DNA from: Octopus bimaculoides
Lineage: Eukaryota
Direction: 5' to 3'
Assembly: GCF_001194135.2 (NCBI RefSeq)
Contig: NC_068994.1
Location: 2,431,270 to 2,470,704 of the forward strand
DNA length: 39,435 nt
In this document: in pieces, positions 5,740 through 39,435 of the stretch
Layout: the number at the start of each line of letters is the position of its first letter
Position numbering within the stretch: position 1 is the stretch's first letter
The notes under the pieces: generated by a model
Told to the model about the DNA's origin: nothing
Database searches by the model: none
What the model saw: only the letters and a program-made list of their open reading frames with translations
Position numbers and translations under genes: made by a program

Positions 5740-5950
5740 ATCATGAGGTAGTGAGTGCGATTTACGGACCAGGCTGTGTTGTGTTCTTGAGCAAGACACT
5801 TTATTTCACGTTGTTCCATTTCACTCAGCTGCAGAAATGAGTGTCAACGTCACTGGTGTCATGCATGAGTGACTGCTGGACTTCCATAAACAAACTTGCC
5901 TCGGGGGAGGTGGGGTAAATTTCTAGGTGCAAACCCATAGTCATTCATGA
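5740..5950 (+). mobile_element. tRNA-derived SINE, head-to-head with the previous copy
   Basis: cttgagcaagacactttatttcacgttgttcc..tcactcagctg is the reverse complement of the 5455-5510 body. Confidence 0.65.
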
Positions 5951-7222: not shown

Positions 7223-7321
7223 GTAAGTCACAGAGAGATGAATGACAGAGAAATGAGTAATATAAAGATGAGTGTCAGAAAAATAAGAAATAGAAGGATA
7301 AGCGATAGAGACATAAGTGAT

Positions 7322-7377
<56 letters not shown>

Positions 7378-7547
7378 AAGAGAGAGAGTAAATAAATTAA
7401 ATCCCATTAACTTAAGTAATATCTTCCAATCAATTAAAAATATGGAATTTCTGGAATACTTTGAATGTACTAAATATATTATTGAAGTTTTTGTTATTAT
7501 ATCTATTCTCACAAATGTGCTAACTATCCTTTTATTTTTTTGTCCAG
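7223..7547 (+). other. Predicted 5'UTR intron of gene A (325 nt)
   Basis: Donor AGG|gtaagt, branch-like tgctaac, pyrimidine tract and tccag| ending 56 nt before the ATG. Contains the (GA)n tract. Confidence 0.65.
7321..7388. repeat. (GA)n microsatellite
   Basis: Read directly; source of the ER/SL-repeat ORFs. Confidence 0.95.
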
Positions 7548-7603
7548 TTTGAATATTTGAAGTCATCTCTCCACTGGATACTGTATTAATATCAAGACCA
7601 GAA

Positions 7604-9951
7604 ATGTTATTGTGCCTCTGTATTTTACTAACTTTCTCCCACTGTTCTGCAAGTGAAGATATCACATACCATATTAAAGAAGAGAATAGTCCCTACACCT
7701 ATGTAGGGGACATAGCTACTGACTTACAGAAATCAGACAACTCCTTAAAAAATAAGGATTTAATTACATTTAGTCAACGACAACAGAAGGGAGAACAATT
7801 GTTCAATGTGACGAAAACAGGTAAACTGTACACTGTTCAGACATTGGATGCTGAGTCTGTGTGTAGTTATGAGAAAGAATGTTTTGAAACCATTCAAGTT
7901 GCTGTTAACAAATCCAAGACATTTATGAAGATCTTAAAGATTAAAGTCATAATAGAAGACATCAATGATCACCAACCTGAGTTTCCTAAGAAAGAATTTA
8001 CACTAAAATTTAAGGAAGAAGATCGAGAAGGTATAAAGAAAACTATTCCCAGTGCTATGGATAACGATATAGGAAATAAAAGCAGTTCAATCAAATATAA
8101 ATATCATGGTGATGAACATTTTTCATTATCTGTCTCTAAACAAGCTGACGGATTATCATCATTAGCAATTATTTTAGAAAAGAAATTAGATAGAGAAAAG
8201 AAAGACAGTTACAATATCGAAGTCATTGCTAAAGATGGGGGAACTCCACCAAAACAATCTGTGCTAAAGTTTAAAATATCTGTAGAAGATGAAAATGATA
8301 ATGAACCAAAATTTTCCCAAAGTATCTACAATGTCTCTATAGAACATAAGCATAAAAAGAATATTCCAGTAGTCACATTATCTGCCAGTGATTTAGATAT
8401 TGGCAGGAATGGTAAAATATCATATTACTTTAGTCCGAGAACTGATATGAAGATAAGGAGACATTTTAATTTAGATGAAAAAACTGGAAAAATATACTTA
8501 AACTCTACATTACTTGAAGAGAAATTTTTTGAATTTTATGTTGTGGCTAAAGATAATGGAAGTTCTCCTCTCAATTCCATAGCTACTGTTATGGTAAATG
8601 TCATCAACCAACTGAACAATCCTCCAAATATTGATGTGAACTTTATTTCTACACAGAATCACAACACAGCTACCATTCTGGAAGATATCAAAGTTGGTAG
8701 TTTCATTGCTGATGTGATGGTCACTGACAATGATGTTGGACACAATGGACAGGTGAACTGTCATATCAAAGACGACACATTCAAACTACAATCAATGGGA
8801 TCAAAGGAATATAAAATAGTTCTAAAGAAAGCAGTAGACAGAGAGACACAGGAACATTATCACTTTACTGTGTCGTGTGAAGATAAAGGATTACCTGCTC
8901 TGAAAACTGATAAAGATCTGTCAATCCAAGTGCTAGATGTGAATGATGTAGAACNNNNNNNNNNNNNNNNNNNNNNNNNNNNNNNNNNNNNNNNNNNNNN
9001 NNNNNNNNNNNNNNNNNNNNNNNNNNNNNNNNNNNNNNNNNNNNNNNNNNNNNNNNNNNNNNNNNNNNNNNNNNNNNNNNNNNNNNNNNNNNNNNNNNNN
9101 NNNNNNNNNNNNNNNNNNNNNNNNNNNNNNNNNNNNNNNNNNNNNNNNNNNNNNNNNNNNNNNNNNNNNNNNNNNNNNNNNNNNNNNNNNNNNNNNNNNN
9201 NNNNNNNNNNNNNNNNNNNNNNNNNNNNNNNNNNNNNNNNNNNNNNNNNNNNNNNNNNNNNNNNNNNNNNNNNNNNNNNNNNNNNNNNNNNNNNNNNNNN
9301 NNNCTGAATAACACAGTGAATGTTGAAGTGGAAGTATTGGATAGAAATGATAATGCTCCATATTTTACATTTCCTAGTGTTGACCATTTCACTCTTAATG
9401 TCCACTATCATCCGCAAAGTAAGAACGACATCACAGTTCTGAAAGCATCTGATATAGACAGTCACATGAATGCTTTTCTCAGGTATGAAATCGTTTCAGG
9501 TAACGAGAGACAGTTATTTAAACTGGACTCGCTCACTGGTGTGTTATCTTACTCTCGCACAGTTTACCAAAATGATGCCGGATCATATGAGCTTGAGTTT
9601 GTTGTGAAAGACAGTGGTACCCCAGTTCTGTCAGCAACAACTAGCCTATTGTTGAAGCTAACTATTGACAAAAAAACATATCCAATGAGCCTTACATTAA
9701 TAATTATAATTGCTGTAGCATGTGTAGTTGTATCTTTGGTTATCATAGTTTCTATTACAATATGCATCTTTAAACATATTGAAGTCAAGCAGAGTTCGAG
9801 TGCCATACCAATGCTTTCTATAACAGAAATGAATGACCTCTATAATCGAACAGATTCCCAGTCAGTATCACAAATTGACAATATCTATTGGGAATTAATA
9901 CCAGAAATGTACAAAAATAAACTGTCAACATCTTGTAGTTTCTCAACAGTA
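7604..9951 (+). CDS. Pcdh: Protocadherin A, large coding exon (signal peptide, EC1-EC6, TM, proximal tail); N-gap 8955-9303 covers most of EC5
   Basis: Signal peptide MLLCLCILLTFSHCSA. Cadherin motifs DINDHQPEF, LDRE, DENDNEPKF, DVNDVE, DRNDNAPYF. EC1 Cys-X5-Cys (CSYEKEC). TM LTLIIIIAVACVVVSLVIIVSITICIF. The frame resumes at 9304 after the gap (gap length is an estimate, so frames differ). Phase-0 donor GTA|gtaagt at 9952. Symbol is family-level only. Confidence 0.95.
8955..9303. other. Assembly gap (349 N) inside gene A
   Basis: N run; flanking frames differ, so the size is approximate. Confidence 1.
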
Positions 9952-11231: not shown

Positions 11232-11376
11232 TCAAGACCTTTTCCTCTGCGCTCTGAAGAAAGTAATGCTGCTGCTACATATCCACAATATCTGAACCAA
11301 ACATTAGGTTACTATCATAGCATAGAATCATTGAGAAAAGAGGCCAACCACTATGAAGAATTGCGAGAAACATTAG
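11232..11376 (+). CDS. Pcdh: Protocadherin A cytoplasmic exon 2 (SRPFPLRSEESNAAATYPQYLNQTLGYYHSIESLRKEANHYEELRETL-G)
   Basis: Phase-0 acceptor tttgaacag|, 48 open codons, phase-1 donor TTAG|gtattg. Phases (0 in, 1 out), size (145 vs 154 nt) and the YEE(L/I) position near the 3' end match exon 2 of gene B. The 5' boundary is ambiguous (competing AG at 11195-11196). Confidence 0.65.
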
Positions 11377-12190: not shown

Positions 12191-12264
12191 ACTTGAACAT
12201 CTGTGAAACACCTTCATTAATAAATGCTGACAAGGACAAAGAAACATGTGAAAGACCAGAGTAG
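12191..12264 (+). CDS. Pcdh: Protocadherin A candidate terminal exon 3 (DLNICETPSLINADKDKETCERPE*)
   Basis: Strong acceptor ttgcacttttctctcttttag|, open in the required phase 1. ATGTGAAAGA-CCAGAGTAGCAG resembles ATGTGAAACCTCCAGAGAGACAG in exon 3 of gene B. AATAAA downstream at 12786. Confidence 0.55.
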
Positions 12265-15998: not shown

Positions 15999-17670
15999 GC
16001 ATGCGTGCAGACGTATGAAAGGATAAATGGATGGCTCGAGGGAGAGATAGGCAGTTAAATATGCACATTCAAAAAATGTTTAAATCATCTCTTTAAATTA
16101 TATTTCCTAGATAATTTAAGTTTCTCTAAAGATATTTAATACATATTTGGTTGTCGTGTTTCAAGAAGACTCATGATCACATAAGAAATGGATAAATGAC
16201 AAAAGTACAAGAACTATTCAATCACTATTACAGAAAAGGGTAAAATTCCTCACCGAAATGATATTTAGTTACAGCTCATTACAGTGAGTTCAAATCTCGC
16301 GAAGGTTAATTTTTCTTTCCATTGTTCTGTAGTCGCTTAGATAAAGTACCAGTGAAGTATCGCGATTGATTTAATCAACTTTCTTTCCCCCATTACACAA
16401 AAAATATGGATTTGTGCTAATATTGGCAATCAATTGCAGAAGTTAAATTGAAAGAACAATTAGTGATTTCTAAGAATTGCAATGTCATTTGTATCGATGC
16501 TTCCAAGTAGATGTAATATTTACTTTTATACAAGAGAGCAAATGTTCTAAACCTGCTTCCTTCTTGTCATTCTTGACCACCTTTTATCATTCTACGCTTG
16601 CCTTGCAAGTGCCCTACAAACAGTTAACCCAAATATCCCTCCTATTACACACATCTCTTCGACATCTCGTCCATGCCCTAATATTTTTTATCTTTTAGTC
16701 ATTGAAAGTATCTTTTGGAATGGGAAGCAGTGCTCATCGGCCATAAGAGATTCTTCAAGACGAGTTGAAGGGAGGAAGGAAAGTATCCTCCAACTGAATG
16801 TTCTCCTTCTACATTTGACCGATCCATTTAAAAAAAGGAAAACGATTGCCATCTACGCATAGTCTAATAACAGTCGGTTCTAGAGTAATGAAAGTTTCAG
16901 AGTTAATTCCCTTGCATCATTTTAAGCTATTTTGAATTAGAGTGACGTCCCTTCGTCTAGCTAGGCTAAGATGATTTTAGAGTGATTTCCCTTATTAAAT
17001 CATATTAATTCAAATTAGACCCACTTTTCAATAGTGTGCCGACCAATATGTCTCTACACAAGTAGTTCGACATGCTAGACATATCAGCAAAATTCCTCTA
17101 CCAGTTTTAAAAAGGTAAGACACACCAGAATAACGTAGTCTAAAATATTTTTAGATGGGTTGGTCATAGGTGTAAACGTTTGGATCACTGGTTAACTCAT
17201 AATCTGCAATTGATTTTAATTTTTCTTGCATTAAAAAAATAGTTCTACTTCTGTAAATGGATAAAAGTAATTCAGGTAATTACACACACACACACACACA
17301 AATACATATCAAAGGCATTTTGGATCAATGTTAAACCTCTGCCACCCTGCTTTTGTTTTAGGTAGAGGCGGTCGACATCACTGTTAATGTGGAAATTATT
17401 TGTGCTTGTTAGTATTTTCCAAGTTTTCTTATCAATGGCTTAGACTTTATCAAGCATCCAATGTATGTATGTATGCATATATTCATGTGTGTATGTGTGT
17501 GTAGAATGTTTTTAACATAATGTGCCCATAAAGCGATTTTTTCTTAGACAAATACTGGTGCTTCTGGCTTTTCAATGAAACAAATATGATAAATATGTCA
17601 TATAGATAAATATTTCACTGAAGAGCAGCTTCCATTTCATAATTCGAATATACATACATACATATATACA

Positions 17671-17671
<1 letters not shown>

Positions 17672-17733
<62 letters not shown>

Positions 17734-17743
17734 NNNNNNNNNN

Positions 17744-17788
<45 letters not shown>
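17672..17788. repeat. Long (AT)n microsatellite with a 10-N gap; AT/CA low complexity continues to about 18270
   Basis: Read directly; source of the YI-repeat ORFs. Confidence 0.95.
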
Positions 17789-17795
<7 letters not shown>

Positions 17796-18429
17796 CATAC
17801 ACAGATGCACACACTCACATGCATGCACACACAAACACCTATTTATGGAACTGGGAGATATTACCTTGTTTTGAAACAAGTGAAATTTGTGACAGTAGGG
17901 CATCAAGCCATAGGAAAATTTACCTCAATATATTCCATCTGACCCATGCAAGCATGTAAAAGTGAACGTTAAAGTGGTGTTGATGATATGTATAAATATG
18001 CATATTTATAGTTGTATATACCCGCAAGTGTTGGTATGTGTGTGCGTGCATATATATATATATATGTATATAAATATATATATATATATACATACATATA
18101 TACACATATACATATATATGTATATCTATTTATCTCTCTCTCTCTATCTATACATACATAAATACATGCATACATACATACATTATCATACATTATCATA
18201 CATACATACATATGAACAGAAGATAACATACATACACACATGCACCTAACTACTTGCTCAAATATACACACACAGAAATTCATTGAAATGATATCTTCAA
18301 GTCTTCATAAAATATGTTTATACACTTACTTGGTCTTTTAGAGAATATCAAAGCATTTATATAAAATTTAACAAAATTTGATTCTATCACAAACTTCAAT
18401 TTAATGTAAAATAGAAGCTATAGAATTGT

Positions 18430-22875: not shown

Positions 22876-24831
22876 GAACATGGCATCAAGCACTGAACAG
22901 CAACAAAACCAAGGGAGATATGTAAAACACCCTGATATCATAAATGCATAGTTGCATCTAAGCATAAAAAAACATCACATTTTAGAGAAATTTACTATTT
23001 CATGATAAATTTTCATTTGAAGATGTGGTTCTTGCATCTAATGGTGTTTTTTCTTTAATTTTCATGTACAATTTATATTTGTTTTTAAAATAACAAAAGT
23101 ATATAAAAAAATAAATAAAAAGGAATAACAAACAGCGTTGATAAATAAATCTGTTTCTTTTGCAATTATGTAATATTATATATAATTAGATTTTAAATAA
23201 ATGAATGGAACGTTTCGATTCCATTTATTTTTCTAATTTTTTTAAGTGAAAATGAGGAATAAATTTTTACTACCATTTAGCTTATATCCTCTTCCATTAG
23301 AGAAATACCGAAGAAATAGGTCACAGGAAATTTCAGTCTTGGCCATAGCTATTCTATTTAAAAACCTAATTTGTTTTTTGATATCTTTAATTTGGATTTT
23401 AATTCATCTACAAAGTTCTGGATATGTAACATGAAATTGCTTGTGGTATAAATTTTGCTAGCTAAATTATTTTGTAAAATATATGTGTGTGTGTATATAT
23501 ATATATATATATAGCTGTTAAATAGAGGCTGGAATAGACTATTTATTTCCTCTATACACTCTAACTGAAGAACAGACAATGAAGAACAGCCAGTTTAACT
23601 GACTCATTCAGAAAACTACTCCTTGTGTATGAAGCTCATAGCGACCTAAAGTAGCAGACAAGCAATGAAATCTGATGAGAAAATATATTATAGCTAATGA
23701 TAAGAGACTTCAAATAATGAAAGTAAGTATTTAATGTTTTCACTAATTTTTAAGCACAAATTGTGTCTTGTGATTATTTTCATAACGAAAATTATCCATT
23801 TGTCTCATCCATTTTGAAGCCATATTGTTTCTGCAGCATAGTATACAAGAGAATTATTATCATAGTATTTCAATGTTTTTCACTCATCAAAAATTTTGAT
23901 TTCACTTTGGTATTTTTATGAATGATTTGTTTCTTTCATATTTGTAGTTTGGTGCCAAATTTTTTAGTATTGTTGAAAATCTAACAAATCAACATTCATC
24001 ATTCACAAAGCTAAATTTTATTTAACACTTATGATGCTGTTGAAATTATTTTCTTAAAATTCTTTTATATTAATGAATATCATAATAACATTATAACTAT
24101 AATTATTATGTAAAAGACATCACTTAATGGTAGGTTCTTTTAAATAAAGAGATATTTGAAACTAATCAATAATAAATTAAAGTATTGTTGATTTGAAAAT
24201 TTTTATTGAAAATTTTTAATAACATTAACGATGAAAAACCATCATAATGACAATGCAGCCACAAGGACAGACATTTTAACTCAAAATATTATTAACTCTC
24301 AGAAAATTAAGAATTAACAATTTAACAGTGATTAAAAGGAGAATAATAACATCTGTCGTACTTAATGAGGTTTAAATCTCATTTCAATGCCTGAAAGGTT
24401 TTCAAATAATTTTCCACATATATCTTGAATTTAAAACAAAATGTGTTCTTTTACTGAGACAAACACCATATTAAATCAAGATGGTGCTTATGCACAACTG
24501 TCTGTACTACTACTACTAAATACAACAAAGAATATAATCATATTTCAAGAACAGATTAACCAAGAAATTGCAATCATCAGTACATTATTGTATGTAAAAA
24601 TACAACTACAATATAATTTCTCTTTCATGTAAGTTTATAATTTTCAGAATGTTTTATCATGTGTTTCATGTTAGTGCAGATGTTTCCTGAAAAAGACATT
24701 TTGATTTTTAACATACATAATATCTGACAACAATACTCATTATCACATATTAAAGTCCAATCTTAGTCTTAACTATCTTTCATTTTGATAATGTCTCTCC
24801 TTACCCCTTTGTTTATTTTTAATGTTACGTT

Positions 24832-28406: not shown

Positions 28407-30822
28407 ATGACATTACTAATTGTGATGGTAATAATATCTTTCCTCCCGTCTGCGGCATGTATAGACATTACAGTTCGTTTAAAAGAAGAAAATAGTCCCA
28501 AAAGCTATGTGGGGGACATCACTGCTAACTCCCAAAAATGGCTCCTGGACAAAGAAGATCTCAGTCAGATTACATTTAATCAACTCCAACAAAAGGAGAC
28601 AAAATTATTCAATGTCACCCTGTCCGGGAAACTGTACACCGTTAGGACAGTGGATGCTGAGTCACTATGTAGATATAATACAGAATGTTATAAAACCGTG
28701 AAAGTTGCTGTTCACAAAGGAAAAAACTTCTTGAAAATCTTAAAAATTAAAGTAATTATAGAAGACATCAATGACCACCAACCTGAGTTTCCAGACAAAG
28801 AAATAACTTTGCACTTTGGAGAAGGAGATGGTAAAGGGATGAAAAAATCCATTCCAAATGCCATTGACAAAGATGTTGGAGTTTTAAATAGTGTAATTAA
28901 TTATCATTTAAAGAACAATGAGGAAATGTTTTCTTTGTTAGTTTCTAAAAGAGCTGATGGAATATCTCGACTAGAGATTGTCCTAGAAAGTAAATTAAAT
29001 AGAGAAGTGAAAGACATGTACAGTGTACAAGTTGAGGCTGAAGATGGAGGTTCCCCTTCTAAAAAGAGTGTATTAGATGTGAAAATATTAGTAGAAGATG
29101 AAAATGATAACTTACCAGTATTCTCTCAGAATATTTATAATGTTACTATAAAAAGTTATTTTCAAAATGATATACCTGTTGTCACTTTGTCAGCTACAGA
29201 TTCCGATATTGGCAATAATGGGAAAATAAATTATTATTTTAGTCCAAAAACGTCAGATCTTGATAGCAAATATTTTAGACTCGTTAAGAAAACTGGTGAG
29301 ATATTCTTGATTGATAAAATTGATGCTATCATTGACAATGAAGTTTATACATTGTACGTTGAAGCCAGAGATGGTGGCAACCCTCCTCTCAGTTCCATAG
29401 CCACTGTTATGGTAAATGTCATCAACCAGCAGAACAATCCTCCAAATATTGATGTGAACTTTATTTCTACACAGAATCACAACACAGCTACCATTCTGGA
29501 AGATATCAAAGTTGGTAGTTTCATTGCTTATGTGATGGTCACTGACAATGATGTTGGACACAATGGACAGGTGAACTGTCATATCAAAGACGACACATTC
29601 AAACTACAGTCAATGGGATCAAAGGAATATAAAATAGTTCTAAAGAAAGCAGTAGACAGAGAGACACAGGAACATTATCACTTTACTGTGTCGTGTGNNN
29701 NNNNNNNNNNNNNNNNNNNNNNNNNNNNNNNNNNNNNNNNNNNNNNNNNNNNNNNNNNNNNNNNNNNNNNNNNNNNNNNNNNNNNNNNNNNNNNNNNNNN
29801 NNNNNNNNNNNNNNNNNNNNNNNNNNNNNNNNNNNNNNNNNNNNNNNNNNNNNNNNNNNNNNNNNNNNNNNNNNNNNNNNNNNNNNNNNNNNNNNNNNNN
29901 NNNNNNNNNNNNNNNNNNNNNNNNNNNNNNNNNNNNNNNNNNNNNNNNNNNNNNNNNNNNNNNNNNNNNNNNNNNNNNNNNNNNNNNNNNNNNNNNNNNN
30001 NNNNNNNNNNNNNNNNNNNNNNNNNNNNNNNNNNNNNNNNNNNNNNNNNNNNNNNNNNNNNNNNNNNNNNNNNNNNNNNNNNNNNNNNNNNNNNNNNNNN
30101 NNNNNNNNNNNNNNNNNNNNNNNNNNNNNNNNNNNNNNNNNNNNNNNNNNNNNNNNNNNNNNNNNNNNNNNNNNNNNNNNNNNNNNNNNNNNNNNNNNNN
30201 NNNNNNNNNNNNNNNNNNNNNNNNNNNNNNNNNNNNNNNNNNNNNNNNNNNNNNNNNNNNNNNNNNNNNNNNNNNNNNNNNNNNNNNNNNNNNNNNNNNN
30301 NNNNNNNNNNNNNNNNNNNNNNNNNNNNNNNNNNNNNNNNNNNNNNNNNNNNNNNNNNNNNNNNNNNNNNNNNNNNNNNNNNNNNNNNNNNNNNNNNNNN
30401 NNNNNNNNNNNNNNNNNNNNNNNNNNNNNNNNNNNNNNNNNNNNNNNNNNNNNNNNNNGACGTCACCAATGTTCACAGCTGTGCACCTACCAAGTGATAA
30501 CACCATAGATGCCACATTGTTGATTATCATTGTAGTAGCAGCTGTGATAGTATCTATAGCTATTGTGGTTTCTATAACACTGTGTATTGTGAGATGTAAC
30601 AATGTGAGAAATAGCTCATCTGAAAGAACAGCAGAAGAGAAACAGGCATACCAATGTCGCAATGAGATGAGACAGTTGATCTATCAAGGTAACAACAGTG
30701 TACCTGTGATGTCAGGTAATCGAGGAGAGACATCAGACAGATATGGTCATTCGAGGAGCCATTACTATCCAGAAGATTGGAAGACATCGACAATGAACAG
30801 AAGTCTTCAGAAGTCTACAAAG
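28407..30822 (+). CDS. Pcdh: Protocadherin B, large coding exon; N-gap 29698-30458 covers the end of EC4, EC5 and EC6
   Basis: Signal peptide MTLLIVMVIISFLPSAA. CRYNTEC Cys-X5-Cys, DINDHQPEF, LNRE, DENDNLPVF. After the gap: TSPMFTAVHLPSDNTID, then TM ATLLIIIVVAAVIVSIAIVVSITLCIV. Phase-0 donor AAG|gtaagc at 30823. Confidence 0.95.
29698..30458. other. Assembly gap (761 N) inside gene B
   Basis: N run. Confidence 1.
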
Positions 30823-31506
30823 GTAAGCTTTACTTTAATTAACAATCTGTTAGTAAAGAATGTGTAATTAAGAATGATCTAGCTCAGTGCTTTATATTTG
30901 ACATTACGTTTCACTTGACCAATTTTACAGTATTGTTTTGCTTCATAATGTCCAAAATATATCTTATGTATCGTTAAGAAAATACCATTCCTGATATGGT
31001 GTGGAATACTTATTTATTTAATTTTTGTTTTGTGATTACTGCTGTCCGTTTGTTGTAAGATATTTTATGGCAGATGAATGTCTGAAAAGACATTTACCAG
31101 GATAATAAGAGATCTGTTTATACATTACAGTCTGGCATCTTTAATTTTTGTCAATAGTATTGCATCTGATTTTGTGGAATCATTTATAAAAGTATTGTTA
31201 ACAATTGTTTCTGACTTTAACTAACTTATACTGTATATAATTATTGAAGGAAACGAGGAAACATAATGAGGTAAATTCTGAAGGTTTTATTGTTTTGTCA
31301 GTGGAGAAATGTCAGTACTTGTGCCTTTTCCTACTGAAAGATTAAAAAATCTTAACAACAGGCTTAAAAAATTTGACTGATCAGAAATATAGAAAAAATT
31401 TTTTTATTACCACCAAAAACCTGTAAATTTTATTATTATTACATATTTTAGTGTCAATCATAAATGTTATGTTTAGGGTATGTCTTATTACTATTATATT
31501 TTACAG

Positions 31507-31660
31507 CAGAAATACAGTCAACCCATTGAGGTGACATCTTATGGAGACAACAGACCATCTTCTAACTATCCCACTGACACATTGACCAGTCGTAAGAGTA
31601 GTGGACAGTGCTGGAGTGAGCGGTCAAGTAGACAGTATGAAGAAATACCAGCAATGTCAG
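31507..31660 (+). CDS. Pcdh: Protocadherin B cytoplasmic exon 2 (QKYSQPIEVTSYGDNRPSSNYPTDTLTSRKSSGQCWSERSSRQYEEIPAMS-G)
   Basis: Acceptor ctattatattttacag| in phase 0, 51 open codons of Ser/Arg/Tyr-rich tail-like sequence, phase-1 donor CAG|gtaaaa. Confidence 0.85.
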
Positions 31661-31959
31661 GTAAAACAATCTCATTTATTCATATTTGTTATTAATTCTA
31701 TTCATAGTATTTACTTTAGAGATTAATCAACTCTAAATCTGTAATTTACTAATGCTTTAAGCAACACAAATCATCTTTATGACATGTTAAATGTTGCTTT
31801 TGTTATGTAGTCTTATCCACTATAGTTTCTACTTCTGTAAAAGACCTAGAAATATCTGGAGATTGGCTATATTAATATACAGTCAAAAGTGGCAATATTT
31901 TAGGGTTAACACTTGTGTGCTGAGGGTGCTGCTGTTCTCTATCTCCCAATGCAGGAATC

Positions 31960-32310
31960 AATATCTCATCAGACAGTAAAGCAATCCTGTAGGTGTTGCT
32001 GTCCCTTCCACTGCAACAACACGGCCTTGGTGTTGCAAGCAGAGTGGTTGGTGCCTTTCTCAATCATGCCCTGTACACAGTAATCCAAAGGAATTAGAAG
32101 ACCAAAAATTGGGGCTGGTGAACTCGTAGAAATTCTCAGACAACTATCTCTGACTCTTTCCAGAAGTATGGAAAGGAGCCCAATCCTGCCAACACACACA
32201 GGCTTTCCAGCAGCAACCCTCTCCAGCCAGGGTTTGACCACAGTCTTGAGCAGGTTCACATAACCATCTAAATTAAACCTAAGGCCCTGGCCATCAGTTG
32301 TTGGGAGAAT
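31960..32310 (-). mobile_element. mariner/maT-type transposase remnant in intron 2 of gene B
   Basis: GLRFNLDGYVNLLKTVVKPWL, frameshift, WQDWAPFHTSGKSQR*LSENF...FWSSNS..LDYCVQGMIE. Matches QQDSAP.H and the partly deleted WP..SPDLNPLDY motif. Confidence 0.85.
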
Positions 32311-33530
32311 ATCTGCTGTGTCCCTTCCTGCTGACCACGGCTACGTAGTCTCTATTGGAAGATAAGGAACAAGAGGATAGTGGCAGGAGTGACGGGGTGA
32401 TAAGAGGAAGTAAGAGAGGTGAAGGTGAAGGTCGAGTGAACTGGGTATAAATGGTTCAATTGGTCTTCGTTTACATTGGCTAAAAGATAAACCAAAAGTG
32501 TCAAATGATCAGAGTGGTGTCAAAGGAAATGGAAAACAGGTGGGTTCTGTGAATGGCACAAAGGAGTGTTTGGGGCAGAGTCAGAATAGGTGCAGTGATG
32601 TCTGTAGTTACAGTGGAAGCCATGTACAGCAAAGTGAAGGAATATACTGCTCTCCTCACTCACATTGAGAAGAGGAGTGAATGGTTGAAAGATGAGCCAT
32701 AGGCATGGGTGAAAGAGTGCAACGTATGGTGAAAAGAAGGTGAACAATAAAAGCATAGAGGGGAGAGTGCAATATGTGATGAACAGAAGAGGTGTACTGC
32801 TATCCTCAATCACACTGAGTGCATAGTATAGTAAGATTGGGAGATTGAGAAGAAGAGGAAGTGATTAAGAGATGAGCATTAGGGGCATGATGCAGGAAGC
32901 TAGAGACATAGAAGCAAGGGTGAAAGAGATATGGGTGACAGCAGACTGATGAGTTACAGAGAAGTGTAATGCAAGGGATGAGCATTTGAGTGACAAAGAG
33001 AGTGAGTAATATGGGATGAGAGACTATCAAAGAGACTTATCAGTAAGCAGACACAAATACACCTAGCATTGTTTTAGTGTGTTTTGCCATGCCTAGATAA
33101 GAAAGCAGATCTTCTCTCACACTGTGTGTAAACTAGTCACTGCAGGCCTTTGTCATCGTCTCTGTGGTGTGTAATAGATTCTGATCTGTCTTCACCATTT
33201 CACCTTTCTTGTATCTCTGTCTCTCTCATCCACAGGTTCCATTTCCTTTGGGAAAACATGCACATTTAGTTGTTCATCTTAATAAATATGTAATTGTAAT
33301 GTGGTTTCTAGTGTCTTTGCAACAAATGGAGCAGAACTGTATTAGGAAATGATATGGTGTGCATTTAATTGAAATCAGCTTCTTAGATAAGGACACTTAA
33401 AACTTGATTTTTATTTTATATTATAGCCCTGTCATTGTAGCAGACTAGGAATTGATTACTAATATCAGTAAATACCTATTTATTATGTAAACTATGTGAT
33501 GAATGTAGCTGATATATGTGTGTGTTTCAG

Positions 33531-33652
33531 GAATCTATGGTGGTGCCCCACCTGATGTATCAAGCACCATTGAGAGAGACCATTACCAAGACAGATATGT
33601 GAAACCTCCAGAGAGACAGTTACCTTCAACACCAGATGTTGTTGTCAGTTAA
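33531..33652 (+). CDS. Pcdh: Protocadherin B terminal exon 3 (GIYGGAPPDVSSTIERDHYQDRYVKPPERQLPSTPDVVVS*)
   Basis: Acceptor tgtgtgtttcag|, open in phase 1 for 39 full codons to TAA 33650-33652. GC-richer than its flanks. AATAAA at 33741. Confidence 0.8.
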
Positions 33653-36869: not shown

Positions 36870-37370
36870 TTAGTTGCCTTGGTCATAACAGAAGTGTTCA
36901 ACATAAGAGTTGTATATAGGAACTGTTGCAGGGCAATGGCATAGTTCTTATAGTTTAATCTGCCAAAGAATTACATAAAAAATTCATAATGCAGATGCAA
37001 AGCCTAGAATTCTGAAGTTTTAAAGTAAATCTAGAAAAGACTAAGATTTTATTAACAGGAAGGGAAACAGAACCATCTAGGAATTGGTCATAGTCCATAT
37101 ACAGAAAAGGAGGATATGGGAATGGTGTTATTTATGGGTGCACGAACGATGTATTGAGACAGCATCAGAGTTATAGAGAAGGACTCGGTATACAGCAGAT
37201 ATATGGGAATAGAATTGGCGTTAAGAGCAACCATAAAATATATTCTTTTAAACGCTTGGAGATCTTAGAAGTTGCTCATAGCTTTTGGTACCTAGATGAC
37301 TTAATAAGCTGTGGAGGATCGTGTTCTGAAAGTATGGTAAGCCAGAGTAAGAATGGAATGAAAGAGATGG
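36870..37370 (+). mobile_element. RTE-clade LINE RT remnant
   Basis: FKVNLEKTKILLTG and LEVAHSFWYLDDLISCGGSCSES (F.YLG motif), plus an eroded ELLYADD-like stretch near 36920. Confidence 0.7.
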
Positions 37371-38216
37371 TGAGACACTGTGCTGGTGAAGGTTCTTCTA
37401 ACCACACAAACCTGGGAAAGATGAATGCAAAATGATGATGACAGTATAACTTATGATTTCTTAAATATTATGTAGTGTAAGAAGTGGCTTTTTACTTTCA
37501 GAAATTACTGAAGTTGTATCCCATGACTAATGAACCAAGGATACGGATGGAAGACTGAGCATCATAGTTGCAAAGTACGTTGCTTGGGTGGGGGTGTCTC
37601 TTCATTTTAAACTCCCCAAGTAAGATAATTTCTGTGCAATTTGTGGGGTTTGTGTTCATGGGAGATAACTAAAATATTTCATTTCGTTTTGGGATTCAGT
37701 TTGCAAGATTCTTTATGTGAGTTCGTGTGTTGAAGCATATTCTAGTGTGTCTGAGGAGAGTCATTCTCTTTTAGCGCCTTATAATTTAACACACACACCG
37801 ATAAAATTTCCACTCATTTCTTTCTTTATTTTTCTAAAATTTTCGTTGTGTCTTGCAACCTTTTCAATAGTTTTGGTTCTCAGAGTGTGTTAAATTATAA
37901 GGCACTAAAAGGGAATGACTCTCTCCAAACAATAAAATATTTCAACTAATTTTTTATTGAATCATTTGTATGATTTAATATTTTCTTAGAATTTTCCATT
38001 AAAATCTGATTGGATTGCATTTAGTCTATTTAAATTACCCACATAAATTATGAATATGTTGTAGTTTAATCAAATATTCTTCAGAAATTGATCTTAATCT
38101 GTTAACAATCTCATATAGGCCACAACAGTGTTAGTTCATTTCCAGCAGTAGTGAAAATGATGCACTTCAGACTAAGACATATAATTGTGTTTGCTTCAGA
38201 CTATCAGAAAGTAGGA

Positions 38217-38599: not shown

Positions 38600-39435
38600 A
38601 TGTTGCTATTTCTAGTTGTGTTACTGACTTTTTCTCATTGTTATTCAAGTGAAGATATCACATACCATGTTAAAGAAGAGAATAGTCCCTATACTTATGT
38701 AGGGGACATTGCTACTGACTTACAGAAATCAGATAGCTCCTTTTTAAAGAACAAGGATTTAATTACATTTAGTCAACTCCAACAAAAGGGAGAACAGTTG
38801 TTCAATGTGACGAAAACAGGGAAACTGTACACTGTTCAGACATTGGATGCTGAGTCTGTGTGTAGTTATGAGAAAGAATGTTTTGAAATCGTTAAAGTTG
38901 CTGTTCACAAATCCAAGACATTTATGAAGATCTTAAAGATTAAAGTCATAATAGAAGACATAAATGATCACCAACCTGAGTTTCCTGAGAAAGAAATTAA
39001 TATACAATTTGAAGAAGAATATGGGAAAGGAAAAAAAAATCCTGTACCTAATGCTATTGACAAAGATATAGGTTATCAAAACAGTTTAATTAAATATGAG
39101 TTACATGGTGATAAAGCACTATTTTCATTATCTGTCTCTAAACAAGCTGATGGATTATCAACCTTAAGAATCATTTTAGAAGATAAATTAGACAGAGAAA
39201 AAAAAGACGACTACAATATCGAAGTCATTGCTAAAGATGGGGGAACTCCACCAAAGGAGTCTGTTTTAAATGTTAAAATATCTGTAAAAGATGAAAATGA
39301 TAATGCACCACAATTTTCTCAAAGTATCTACAACGTCTCAATTGAACATAAACACAAAAAGAATATTCCAGTAGTCACATTATCTGCCAGTGACTTAGAT
39401 ATTGGTAGGAATAGTAAAATATCTTTCTATTTTAG
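38600..39435 (+). CDS. Pcdh: Protocadherin C, 5' part (signal peptide, EC1, EC2, start of EC3); runs off the window end
   Basis: Not in the ORF track because no stop falls inside the window. Manual translation MLLFLVVLLTFSHCYSSEDITYHVKEENSPYTYVGD...DINDHQPEF...LDRE...DENDNAPQF...DLDIGRNSKISFYF is uninterrupted and is a close paralog of gene A. Confidence 0.95.
   Translation, partial: MLLFLVVLLTFSHCYSSEDITYHVKEENSPYTYVGDIATDLQKSDSSFLKNKDLITFSQLQQKGEQLFNVTKTGKLYTVQTLDAESVCSYEKECFEIVKVAVHKSKTFMKILKIKVIIEDINDHQPEFPEKEINIQFEEEYGKGKKNPVPNAIDKDIGYQNSLIKYELHGDKALFSLSVSKQADGLSTLRIILEDKLDREKKDDYNIEVIAKDGGTPPKESVLNVKISVKDENDNAPQFSQSIYNVSIEHKHKKNIPVVTLSASDLDIGRNSKISFYF

What the first reader, a model, noticed from the sequence alone, without database searches (positions are those of the whole stretch)
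31636..33634. FAK-like bipartite Src docking module (YEEI + RQLPSTP) in the tail of protocadherin B
Seen: exon 2 encodes YEEI (31636-31647) and exon 3 encodes RQLPSTP (33614-33634). Established: pYEEI is the optimal Src-family SH2 ligand, RxLPxxP is the class I Src SH3 ligand, and FAK uses a comparable pair (RALPSIP plus Y397-AEI). Inference: this protocadherin could bind and activate a Src-family kinase directly through two motifs on two separate exons. Gene A keeps YEEL at the same exon position (11352-11363), suggesting selection on the tyrosine motif despite strong tail divergence.
Basis: partly seen in the sequence, partly recalled or inferred. Interest (0 to 1): 0.75.

Follow-up and report, generated by a model that had tools for sequence, protein, structure and literature searches.

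The report
Conserved Src-docking-like motifs, octopus protocadherin tail
The two short motifs are really there, correctly spliced, and strongly conserved in a family of octopus neuronal adhesion genes, so they are probably a working signalling or sorting site. That the partner is a Src-type kinase is still only a good guess from sequence.

Summary
The window is Octopus bimaculoides DNA with three tandem protocadherin genes (A, B, and the start of C). YEEI (31636-31647) and RQLPSTP (33614-33634) lie in frame in exons 2 and 3 of gene B. The spliced tail is 100% identical to NCBI XP_014783453.1.

Both motifs are kept in at least six O. bimaculoides paralogs, in O. sinensis, and in three tandem Argonauta hians genes. 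Each gene has its own exon copies. Exon 2 is 95-99% and exon 3 85-100% identical in DNA, while the adjacent introns are indistinguishable from shuffled sequence. Inside exon 3 the linker drifts freely, but the block RYVKxPERQLPSxPDV is held.

Y-E-x-[IL] at the same exon position survives in four of five divergent paralog groups, including gene A. The proline motif is confined to the B subfamily. The tail is predicted disordered and matches no Pfam family.

A Src-family SH2/SH3 docking module is the best-fitting reading, but no binding or phosphorylation was tested. The motif order is reversed relative to FAK and p130Cas and resembles connexin-43. A YxxΦ sorting signal is a serious rival.

In passing: an O. 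vulgaris mRNA differs from its genome at one residue in 852, and that residue is the motif tyrosine (Y to C, A>G).

The parts
28407..30822 (+). Gene B (LOC106878683) exon 1. It encodes the signal peptide, cadherin repeats, the TM helix (about 30511-30591) and the first 77 cytoplasmic residues. An assembly gap lies inside it at 29698-30458.
   Evidence: ORF. Donor AAG|gtaagc. Pfam Cadherin and Cadherin_2 hits. AF2 gives a confident helix only at the TM.
31507..31660 (+). Gene B exon 2 (154 nt; starts in phase 0, ends in phase 1). Product: QKYSQPIEVTSYGDNRPSSNYPTDTLTSRKSSGQCWSERSSRQYEEIPAMS+G. A NAGNAG acceptor (cagCAG, 31504-31509) gives isoforms with and without the Gln.
   Evidence: P0001 vs P0169. 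It is 95-99% identical in DNA to copies in gene C and in three A. hians genes, while flanking introns score like shuffles.
31636..31647 (+). YEEI: candidate phosphotyrosine SH2 ligand, or a YxxΦ sorting signal.
   Evidence: Conserved in all B-type copies. The homologous position reads YEEL or YETL in three other paralog groups.
33531..33652 (+). Gene B exon 3 (terminal; stop TAA at 33650-33652). Product: (G)IYGGAPPDVSSTIERDHYQDRYVKPPERQLPSTPDVVVS.
33584..33640 (+). Conserved block YQDRYVKPPERQLPSTPDV within exon 3. The 17 codons before it form a freely evolving linker.
   Evidence: block pN 0.041 against pS 0.14-0.20; linker pN 0.19-0.215, about equal to pS. The divergent paralog P0185/P0194 keeps ERYVKNPERQLPSPPDV.
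33614..33634 (+). RQLPSTP: class I SH3-ligand consensus (R-x-L-P-x-x-P). The embedded PSTP also fits a proline-directed Ser/Thr kinase site.
   Evidence: Invariant in O. bimaculoides, O. sinensis and A. hians B-type copies.
7604..9951 (+). Gene A (LOC128249402) exon 1, with an N gap at 8955-9303.
   Evidence: P0156 and P0195.
11232..11376 (+). Gene A exon 2 (145 nt, ends in phase 1), containing YEEL at 11352-11363.
   Evidence: The orthologs P0175 (O. sinensis) and P0189 (O. vulgaris) keep HHYEELPETL.
12191..12264 (+). Gene A exon 3 (DLNICETPSLINADKDKETCERPE*). It has no proline motif.
22877..22951 (+). Orphan exon-3-like relic (NMASSTEQQQNQGRYVKHPDIINA*). It aligns to the B-type exon 3 with the PERQLPSP core deleted. 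The match is weak.
   Evidence: E = 0.06.
38600..39435 (+). Start of gene C exon 1, which runs off the window. Its own tail exons, with YEEI and RQLPSTP, lie just beyond the window.
   Evidence: L001 20161-21205.

Best explanation
Exons 2 and 3 of gene B encode the end of a disordered cytoplasmic tail. This tail acts as a replicated 'constant region' of an octopod-specific protocadherin subfamily: ectodomains differ (61-69% identity) while tails are nearly invariant (89-98%).

The tail carries two constrained short linear motifs. The older and more widespread one is Y-E-x-[IL](-P) at the end of exon 2. It most likely works as a phosphotyrosine docking site whose best sequence match is the SH2 domain of a Src-family kinase. 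The B subfamily adds R-Q-L-P-S-[TP]-P about 35 residues downstream, a class I SH3 ligand of the FAK/p130Cas type.

Proposed mechanism (inferred, not shown): the SH3 domain of a Src-family kinase binds the proline motif. The kinase then phosphorylates YEEI, and perhaps neighbouring tyrosines such as IYG, YSQP and YVKP. The SH2 domain then locks onto pYEEI. Engaging both regulatory domains holds the kinase open and active at sites of protocadherin engagement. This is the sequential SH3-then-SH2 logic described for connexin-43, p130Cas/Sin and FAK.
For: Shown:
- The motifs and splicing are correct.
- Both motifs are invariant in at least six O. bimaculoides loci, in O. sinensis, and in three tandem A. 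hians genes, each with its own exon copies.
- Exon 2 has pN 0.016 against pS 0.10-0.16. The exon 3 motif block has pN 0.041, while the adjacent linker has pN of about 0.2.
- Introns next to the exons align no better than shuffles (z 0-4, one flank z 10.7, against z 65-108 for exons), even between tandem paralogs.
- Y-E-x-[IL] is kept in four of five divergent paralog groups where little else aligns. Gene A's tail is only 32% identical to B's, yet it keeps YEEL in three species.
- The tail is predicted disordered (pLDDT below 50 from residue 72 on) and has no Pfam match, as expected for linear motifs.
- Both motifs together occur by chance with P = 7.5e-6 per tail.

From the literature:
- EPQpYEEIPIYL is a cognate Fyn SH2 ligand.
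- FAK RALPSIP plus pY397 bind Src SH3 and SH2.
- p130Cas RPLPSPP plus YDYVHL do the same.
- In Cx43, Y265 lies N-terminal of the SH3-binding stretch P274-P284 and is engaged sequentially.
- Vertebrate Pcdh-alpha binds Fyn (Kohmura 1998, as cited).
- Src kinases act in neuronal growth cones of the mollusc Aplysia.
Against: - No binding, phosphorylation or activation data exist, and none can be produced here.
- YEE[IL] and YETL also satisfy the YxxΦ adaptor-sorting consensus.
- R-x-L-P-x-x-P can bind other SH3 domains, and PSTP may be a MAPK or CDK5 site.
- The whole of exon 2, including synonymous sites, is conserved. Ortholog conservation therefore does not single out the four residues, and an RNA-level constraint may contribute.
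- The proline motif is absent from gene A and the 'beta-15' group, so bipartite docking cannot be the general function of the tyrosine motif.
- One paralog group (P0190/P0176/P0192) has lost the tyrosine motif.
- The order is reversed relative to FAK and Cas.
- No decapodiform tail in the small sample has either motif.
Confidence: 0.4

Rival explanations
1. YEE[IL]/YETL is a tyrosine-based YxxΦ sorting signal. It would be read unphosphorylated by the mu subunit of a clathrin adaptor complex (AP-2, or AP-3 given the acidic residues) to control endocytosis or endolysosomal delivery of the protocadherin. The exon 3 block would have a separate role. This is not exclusive with SH2 docking, since phosphorylation could switch between the two.
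For: All variants seen (YEEI, YEEL, YETL) fit Y-x-x-[ILMVF]. The motif occurs alone, without the proline motif, in gene A and in the beta-15 group, where it sits 7 residues from the C-terminus. It lies in a disordered tail. From my own knowledge, not tested here: vertebrate clustered protocadherins are largely endolysosomal and their tails control trafficking.
Against: The match goes beyond YxxΦ. Glu at +1 is invariant, Glu or Thr occupies +2, Pro is usual at +4 and Gln or His at -1, giving QYEEIP identical to the middle-T SH2 ligand core. In the B subfamily it co-occurs with a matched SH3 ligand for the same class of partner.
Confidence: 0.25
2. The motifs are real docking sites but for other partners. 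Candidates are another SH2 protein (Syk/Shark-, Fes-, Tec-, Vav- or PLCgamma-like) at the tyrosine and another SH3 protein (p85-, Abl-, Nck- or cortactin-like) at RQLPSTP. Alternatively PSTP serves as a proline-directed phosphosite.
For: The conservation evidence is the same. Consensus motifs are degenerate. P-S-T-P fits the P-x-[ST]-P kinase consensus. The surrounding RKSS and RSS fit basophilic kinase sites (direct reading of the sequence).
Against: pY-E-E-I and R-x-L-P-x-x-P are both the textbook preferences of Src-family domains. Their pairing in one tail is what known Src-docking proteins show.
Confidence: 0.2
3. Conservation reflects constraint at the nucleic-acid level, or exon-limited gene conversion, rather than selection on these peptide motifs. 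Possible RNA-level causes are structure needed for A-to-I editing and splicing enhancers. The resemblance to Src ligands would then be incidental.
For: Synonymous divergence in exon 2 between Octopus and Argonauta is only 0.10-0.23 although flanking introns are saturated. Exon 3 and the first 100 nt of 3'UTR are 100% and 91-92% identical between genes B and C. Albertin 2022 invokes gene conversion in these arrays. Genes A and B share a 98-99% identical 300-nt tract in EC4.
Against: The linker inside exon 3 evolves at pN about equal to pS, so the exon is not uniformly frozen. Y-E-x-[IL] persists in paralogs whose DNA and protein are otherwise almost unalignable. Conversion within a species cannot explain identity between Octopus and Argonauta. 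RNA folds around the site are no more stable than shuffles (z 0.05-0.74).
Confidence: 0.1
4. Pure chance: short motifs in a Tyr-, Ser- and Pro-rich tail with no function.
For: The motif pair was chosen post hoc. Loose versions of both motif classes co-occur in about 1.3% of shuffled tails.
Against: The exact pair has P = 7.5e-6 per tail. It is invariant across three genera and many paralogs while neighbouring residues drift.
Confidence: 0.03

Closest known systems
FAK FERM-kinase linker (RALPSIP 368-374 plus pY397-AEI)
   Same: It pairs a class I R-x-L-P-S-x-P SH3 ligand with a pY-x-E-I SH2 ligand about 30 residues apart in a flexible segment. Both are engaged by one Src molecule. RQLPSTP shares 5 of 7 residues with RALPSIP.
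   Different: The order is reversed here: Tyr is 36 residues N-terminal of the proline motif. The protocadherin has no kinase domain to autophosphorylate the tyrosine. There is no homology, FERM domain or kinase domain; the resemblance is convergent at most.
p130Cas/Sin Src-binding domain (RPLPSPP plus YDYVHL)
   Same: It is a non-enzymatic scaffold with an SH3 ligand (RPLPSPP, against RQLPSPP in paralog P0185/P0194: 6 of 7 residues) plus an SH2 ligand. It also carries further YxxP tyrosines; the octopus tail has YSQP and YVKP.
   Different: Cas is a cytosolic adaptor. Its order is proline motif first, and its SH2 site is YDYV rather than YEEI. There is no homology.
Connexin-43 C-terminal tail (Y265 plus P274-P284)
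   Same: It is the disordered tail of a membrane protein in which the SH2-binding tyrosine lies N-terminal of the SH3-binding proline stretch. Engagement is sequential: SH3 docking, then phosphorylation, then SH2 locking. This is the best precedent for the motif order seen here.
   Different: The spacing is shorter (about 10 residues against 32-36). The motif sequences differ and the protein family is unrelated.
Hamster polyomavirus middle-T pYEEI site (EPQpYEEIPIYL)
   Same: The six-residue core QYEEIP is identical. This peptide is the standard high-affinity ligand of Src-family SH2 domains.
   Different: It is a viral protein with no accompanying SH3 ligand of this type. The similarity is six residues only.
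Vertebrate clustered protocadherin constant domain (Pcdh-alpha/CNR binding Fyn)
   Same: The logic is variable ectodomains joined to a common cytoplasmic tail that couples to non-receptor tyrosine kinases (Kohmura 1998). The octopus B subfamily shows the same pattern of variable ectodomain and constant tail.
   Different: Vertebrates share one set of constant exons by splicing. Here every gene has its own copies. There is no sequence similarity, and the tail matches no Pfam protocadherin-tail family.
YxxΦ tyrosine-based sorting signals
   Same: Y-E-[ET]-[IL] fits the consensus and lies in a disordered cytoplasmic tail.
   Different: The extra conserved positions (-1, +1, +4) and the partnered SH3 ligand are not features of sorting signals.

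Membership tests
Protocadherin (cadherin superfamily), octopus tandem-array type | Several extracellular cadherin repeats with the protocadherin-type N-terminal repeat, encoded by one large first exon | tested here: met
   Pfam Cadherin (E = 1e-36 on the window's 429 aa; 5 repeats in the A. hians full-length relative P0174, 68% identical in the ectodomain) and Cadherin_2. Single long ORF.
Protocadherin (cadherin superfamily), octopus tandem-array type | Single TM helix followed by a cytoplasmic tail; head-to-tail tandem genes, each multi-exonic | tested here: met
   AF2 helix 11-73 with pLDDT above 90 at the TM. Genes A, B and C lie on the same strand. Own exons 2 and 3 per gene. Agrees with Albertin 2022.
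Vertebrate clustered protocadherin constant region | Variable first exons spliced to one shared set of constant exons | tested here: not met
   Each of 2 O. bimaculoides and 3 A. hians genes has its own exon 2 and 3 copies, with different intron lengths (237-684 and 295-1870 nt) and small coding differences.
Vertebrate clustered protocadherin constant region | Sequence homology of the tail (Pfam protocadherin and cadherin tail families) | tested here: not met
   No Pfam family hits P0001 at E <= 0.01. Earlier work also found no vertebrate tail motifs in octopus protocadherins.
Src-family SH2 ligand (pY-E-E-I class) | Y followed by acidic or hydrophilic residues at +1 and +2 and Ile or Leu at +3, in an accessible cytosolic segment | tested here: met
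   YEEI, YEEL and YETL. Cytoplasmic side of the TM and predicted disordered. QYEEIP equals the middle-T ligand core.
Src-family SH2 ligand (pY-E-E-I class) | The tyrosine is phosphorylated in vivo and binds the SH2 domain | not testable with these tools
   Needs phosphoproteomics and binding assays.
Class I SH3 ligand | [RK]-x-x-P-x-x-P core (Src type R-x-L-P-x-x-P) in a disordered region | tested here: met
   RQLPSTP and RQLPSPP. pLDDT below 60.
Class I SH3 ligand | Measured binding to an SH3 domain | not testable with these tools
   Needs peptide or pull-down assays with cephalopod SH3 domains.
FAK/p130Cas-type bipartite Src-docking module | SH3 ligand and SH2 ligand on one flexible chain within reach of one kinase molecule | tested here: met
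   Y162 and R198 of P0001 are 36 residues apart in a predicted disordered stretch. The spacing is 35-36 residues in all B-type copies.
FAK/p130Cas-type bipartite Src-docking module | Order: proline motif N-terminal of the tyrosine | tested here: not met
   The tyrosine (exon 2) precedes the proline motif (exon 3). The reversed order has a precedent in Cx43.
FAK/p130Cas-type bipartite Src-docking module | Presence of a Src-family kinase with canonical SH3 and SH2 pockets in the same organism and cells | not tested
Src1 and Src2 are described in neurons of the mollusc Aplysia.
ITAM / ITIM | YxxL/I-x6-12-YxxL/I (ITAM), or [ILVST]-x-Y-x-x-[ILV] (ITIM) | tested here: not met
   The next tyrosine is YGGA. 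Position -2 is R, N, G or A in the four groups (direct reading).
YxxΦ sorting signal | Y-x-x-bulky hydrophobic in a cytosolic tail | tested here: met
   YEEI, YEEL and YETL. Function not testable here.

The most novel reading that the evidence does not exclude
Octopod protocadherins of this subfamily may have convergently built a 'constant' signalling tail, replicated gene by gene instead of shared by splicing, that recruits Src-family kinases. The docking tyrosine itself may be switched off in a fraction of transcripts by A-to-I RNA editing.

The evidence for editing is one observation. In the 'beta-15' paralog, the O. vulgaris brain-derived mRNA protein QBA31128.1 differs from the genome-encoded protein at a single residue out of 852. 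That residue is the motif tyrosine (Y843C). The genomic codon is TAT, so the change needs an A>G at the second codon position. Editing would then tune how many protocadherin molecules can signal through phosphotyrosine.
Probability: 0.15. Interest if true: 0.8.

Novelty: new member of a known kind. Interest (0 to 1): 0.5.

Why it matters
Octopus protocadherins (168 genes) are the leading molecular candidate for wiring the large cephalopod brain, yet nothing is known about what their tails signal to. Published motif surveys list only ectodomain, TM and PP1 motifs, and found no analogy with vertebrate tails.

This finding supplies a conserved, precisely located pair of motifs with a specific, cheap-to-test partner hypothesis (Src-family kinase) and a sorting-signal alternative. 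That gives the first concrete handle on intracellular signalling of these receptors. It would parallel the Fyn/FAK/Pyk2 coupling of vertebrate clustered protocadherins by convergence.

The pattern of variable ectodomain and replicated constant tail, together with the possible editing of the motif tyrosine, adds testable links to two hallmark cephalopod features: gene-family expansion and RNA recoding.

Tried and rejected
1. The exhaustive representative search with the B ectodomain was meant to give a family census. Its top 150 hits were swamped by giant multi-cadherin proteins, and only P0096 and P0152 were useful. The census therefore rests on about five paralog groups gathered through cluster look-ups and a profile search, not on all 168 genes.
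2. Shared constant exons were rejected: every gene has its own copies.
3. I searched for gene A's proline motif. Its true exon 3 (12191-12264) has none, and a weak exon-3-like relic at 22877-22951 lacks exactly that core.
4. Decapodiform depth: two cuttlefish-type loci scanned downstream of exon 1 and cluster members, including a transcript-derived protein, show no homolog of exon 2 or either motif. This is inconclusive because most of those models are truncated.
5. RNA structure around the candidate edited adenosine: the folds are no more stable than shuffles, so there is no structural support for editing.
6. Exact look-up of hypothetical Y-to-C variants of the O. bimaculoides tails found none in the collection.
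7. ITAM, ITIM and PDZ-ligand readings were rejected by direct inspection. The C-termini vary: VVS, VTS, ITN, INQ, VAI.
8. The O. sinensis locus for P0003 was not on record, and Albertin 2015 is not held in the paper library.
9. The minus-strand R.LP..P at 5904-5924 lies outside every mapped protocadherin segment and listed ORF, so I treated it as chance.
Full report
**What is in the window.** The 39.4-kb window is Octopus bimaculoides DNA (GCA_001194135.2, CM046614.1). It carries three head-to-tail protocadherin genes on the + strand.
- Gene A: exon 1 at 7604-9951, exon 2 at 11232-11376, exon 3 at 12191-12264.
- Gene B: exon 1 at 28407-30822, exon 2 at 31507-31660, exon 3 at 33531-33652.
- Gene C: the first 278 codons, from 38600 to the window end.

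Both complete first exons are interrupted by assembly gaps. Pfam finds Cadherin and Cadherin_2 in the ectodomain and nothing in the tail.

**Checking the observation.** All three motif coordinates are exact. Its product is 100% identical to NCBI XP_014783453.1.
- The same three-exon structure, splice sites and phases recur in gene C and in three tandem Argonauta hians genes.
- A transcript-derived O. vulgaris protein confirms the homologous exon 1-exon 2 junction in a paralog.
- I did not see RNA-seq reads for gene B itself.
- In a six-frame scan of the whole window, YEE[ILV] occurs only at the two reported sites. R.LP..P occurs only in B exon 3 plus one unrelated minus-strand hit.
- Composition-preserving shuffles of the 168-aa tail give 0.003, 0.0018 and 7.5e-6 for the tyrosine motif, the proline motif and both together. 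Because the pair was picked after reading, conservation matters more than these numbers.

**Conservation of the B-type tail.** The same tail, with both motifs intact, is encoded by at least six distinct O. bimaculoides loci: gene B, gene C/P0158, P0096/P0159, P0168, P0170/P0172 and P0185/P0194. It is also encoded by O. sinensis LOC115219122 and by three adjacent A. hians genes.
- Every gene has its own exon 2 and 3 copies, with intron lengths from 237 to 1870 nt. There are no shared constant exons, which agrees with Albertin et al. 2022.
- The result is nonetheless constant-region-like. B against C is 61% identical in the ectodomain but 97% in the tail. B against an A. hians gene is 68% against 89%.
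- At the DNA level, exon 2 is 95-99% and exon 3 is 85-100% identical among copies. The 100 nt of intron on either side mostly align no better than shuffled sequence (z 0-4; one B-C flank reaches 10.7; exons score z 65-108). This holds even between tandem paralogs.
- Nei-Gojobori counts between gene B and the A. hians copies give pN 0.016 and pS 0.10-0.16 for exon 2.
- Within exon 3, the first 17 codons (the linker between the motifs) have pN 0.19-0.215, about equal to pS. The last 21 codons (QDRYVKPPERQLPSTPDVV.S) have pN 0.041 and pS 0.14-0.20.
- A more divergent paralog rewrites the linker completely but keeps ERYVKNPERQLPSPPDV.

So the proline block is specifically constrained at the protein level. 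Exon 2 is constrained as a whole, and its synonymous sites are also unusually quiet.

**Conservation across divergent paralogs.** This is the more telling test for the tyrosine (alignment).
- Gene A's tail is only 32% identical to B's over a 63-residue local match. Even so, A keeps HYEEL at the identical exon offset, and its O. sinensis and O. vulgaris orthologs keep HHYEELP.
- The 'beta-15' group (O. bimaculoides, O. sinensis/O. vulgaris, A. hians) ends in KSSGHIWSERYTGQYEELPGMELS.
- LOC106871762 has SGHGCSEASTAHYETLPGL.
- Only the P0190/P0176/P0192 group has lost the motif (WSEGDITHQTSG).
- Y-E-x-[IL], usually followed by Pro and preceded by Gln or His, therefore survives in four of five groups.
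- The exon 3 proline motif is restricted to the B subfamily. Gene A's real exon 3 lacks it.
- A weak orphan exon-3-like relic at 22877-22951 aligns to the B-type exon with exactly PERQLPSP missing.
- Decapodiform tails in a small and mostly truncated sample show neither motif. On present evidence the module is octopod-specific.

**What it most likely is.** AlphaFold2 gives a confident TM helix and pLDDT below 50 for almost all of residues 72-190, with the last 20 residues in the mid-50s. That is the expected setting for short linear motifs. The sequence matches are close.
- QYEEIP is the core of EPQpYEEIPIYL, a cognate Fyn SH2 ligand.
- RQLPSTP and RQLPSPP resemble FAK RALPSIP and p130Cas RPLPSPP, both established Src SH3 ligands that are paired with an SH2 site.
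It also fails on the source of phosphorylation, since the protocadherin has no kinase domain.
- The better mechanistic precedent is connexin-43. In that membrane-protein tail Y265 lies N-terminal of the SH3-binding stretch P274-P284, and Src binds by SH3, phosphorylates, then locks on by SH2.
- I therefore favour a sequential SH3-then-SH2 docking and activation scaffold for a Src-family kinase in the B subfamily, with the tyrosine motif alone being the older element. My confidence is about 0.4.
- Every biochemical step of this is inference.
- Src kinases are known in molluscan neurons (Aplysia). Vertebrate Pcdh-alpha binds Fyn. I could not retrieve or examine an octopus Src.

**Rivals.**
- (a) A YxxΦ adaptor-sorting signal fits all variants and explains why the tyrosine motif occurs without the proline motif in A and beta-15. 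It is not exclusive with SH2 docking.
- (b) Other SH2 or SH3 partners are possible, or PSTP could be a proline-directed phosphosite.
- (c) Nucleic-acid-level constraint or exon-limited gene conversion could play a part. Low pS, the identical exon 3 plus proximal 3'UTR between B and C, and a 98-99% identical 300-nt tract shared by A and B in EC4 suggest it. It cannot explain the freely drifting linker, the Octopus-Argonauta identity, or the survival of the motif in nearly unalignable paralogs.
- (d) Chance is effectively excluded.

**An unexpected side observation.** The O. vulgaris transcriptome-derived protein QBA31128.1 (beta-15 paralog) differs from the protein encoded by the O. vulgaris and O. 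sinensis genomes at one position in 852. That position is the motif tyrosine, which reads Cys. The genomic codon is TAT, so Cys requires an A>G at the second codon position. That is the signature of A-to-I editing, which is reported to be enriched in cephalopod protocadherins. A polymorphism or an assembly error is not excluded. RNA folds give no support, and no edited B-type variants are in the protein collection. If real, editing would remove the phospho-acceptor in a fraction of molecules.

**Novelty and verdict.** Published surveys of octopus protocadherin motifs list EC1, EC5, EC6, TM and PP1 motifs only, and report no analogy with vertebrate tail motifs. I found no description of this tail module. 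It is a new instance of well-known motif classes, not a new kind of system, and it lacks functional data. Interest: 0.5.

Noticed in passing
L006 13173-13175 (O. vulgaris genome); proteins P0152 vs P0160: The mRNA-derived O. vulgaris protocadherin QBA31128.1 differs from the genome-encoded protein at a single residue of 852: Y843C, the tyrosine of YEEL. The genomic codon is TAT, so Cys needs an A>G change. This is a candidate A-to-I recoding of the motif tyrosine.
   Followed up: partly
window 8580-8879 and 29398-29697: Genes A and B are 98-99% identical in DNA over about 300 nt of EC4, right up to the assembly gap in B, against about 76% over the rest of exon 1. The same peptide stretch recurs in many paralogs and in A. 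hians. It is likely a gene-conversion or 'constant' tract and the likely cause of both N gaps.
   Followed up: partly
window genes A, B, C; L001; P0174: The ectodomain is variable and the tail constant. B vs C is 61% identical in the ectodomain and 97% in the tail. B vs A. hians is 68% and 89%. Gene A is 83% identical to C in the ectodomain, but its tail is only 32% identical to the B-type tail.
   Followed up: yes
window 31504-31509: A NAGNAG acceptor (cagCAG) at exon 2 gives isoforms with and without one Gln (X1/X2). The same pair is annotated in O. sinensis and in another O. bimaculoides paralog.
   Followed up: partly
window 22877-22951 (+): An orphan exon-3-like ORF end (NMASSTEQQQNQGRYVKHPDIINA*) lies between genes A and B. 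It aligns weakly (E = 0.06) to the B-type exon 3 with the PERQLPSP core missing. No other protocadherin fragments lie nearby.
   Followed up: partly
proteins P0190, P0192, P0176 (paralog group in O. sinensis, O. bimaculoides, O. vulgaris): This group has lost the tyrosine motif but carries RKLPPVP or RRLPPTP, another R-x-L-P-x-x-P, at the end of exon 1. That position is homologous to B's NRSLQKSTK and C's SRSLPKSMK.
   Followed up: no
window 30592-33649 (cytoplasmic tail of gene B): The tail is very rich in Tyr (12 of 168) and Ser (26 of 168). It contains YSQP and YVKP (YxxP), IYG at the exon 2/3 junction, and RKSS/RSS basophilic-kinase-type sites next to YEEI.
   Followed up: no
exon 2 and 3 copies in window, L001, L002: Synonymous divergence between Octopus and Argonauta tail exons is only 0.10-0.23 while adjacent introns are saturated. 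This points to extra constraint on the RNA or DNA sequence itself.
   Followed up: partly
window 31969-32259 (-) and 37154-37435 (+): ORF fragments that look like transposon remnants by eye (not run against Pfam). The first sits in gene B intron 2, which is 1870 nt against 295 nt in gene C.
   Followed up: no
window 7238-7665 and 17670-18283: Long microsatellite-like tracts (GA/TC and TA/CA-rich) lie just upstream of gene A and in the A-B intergenic region. One contains a 10-N gap (17734-17743).
   Followed up: no
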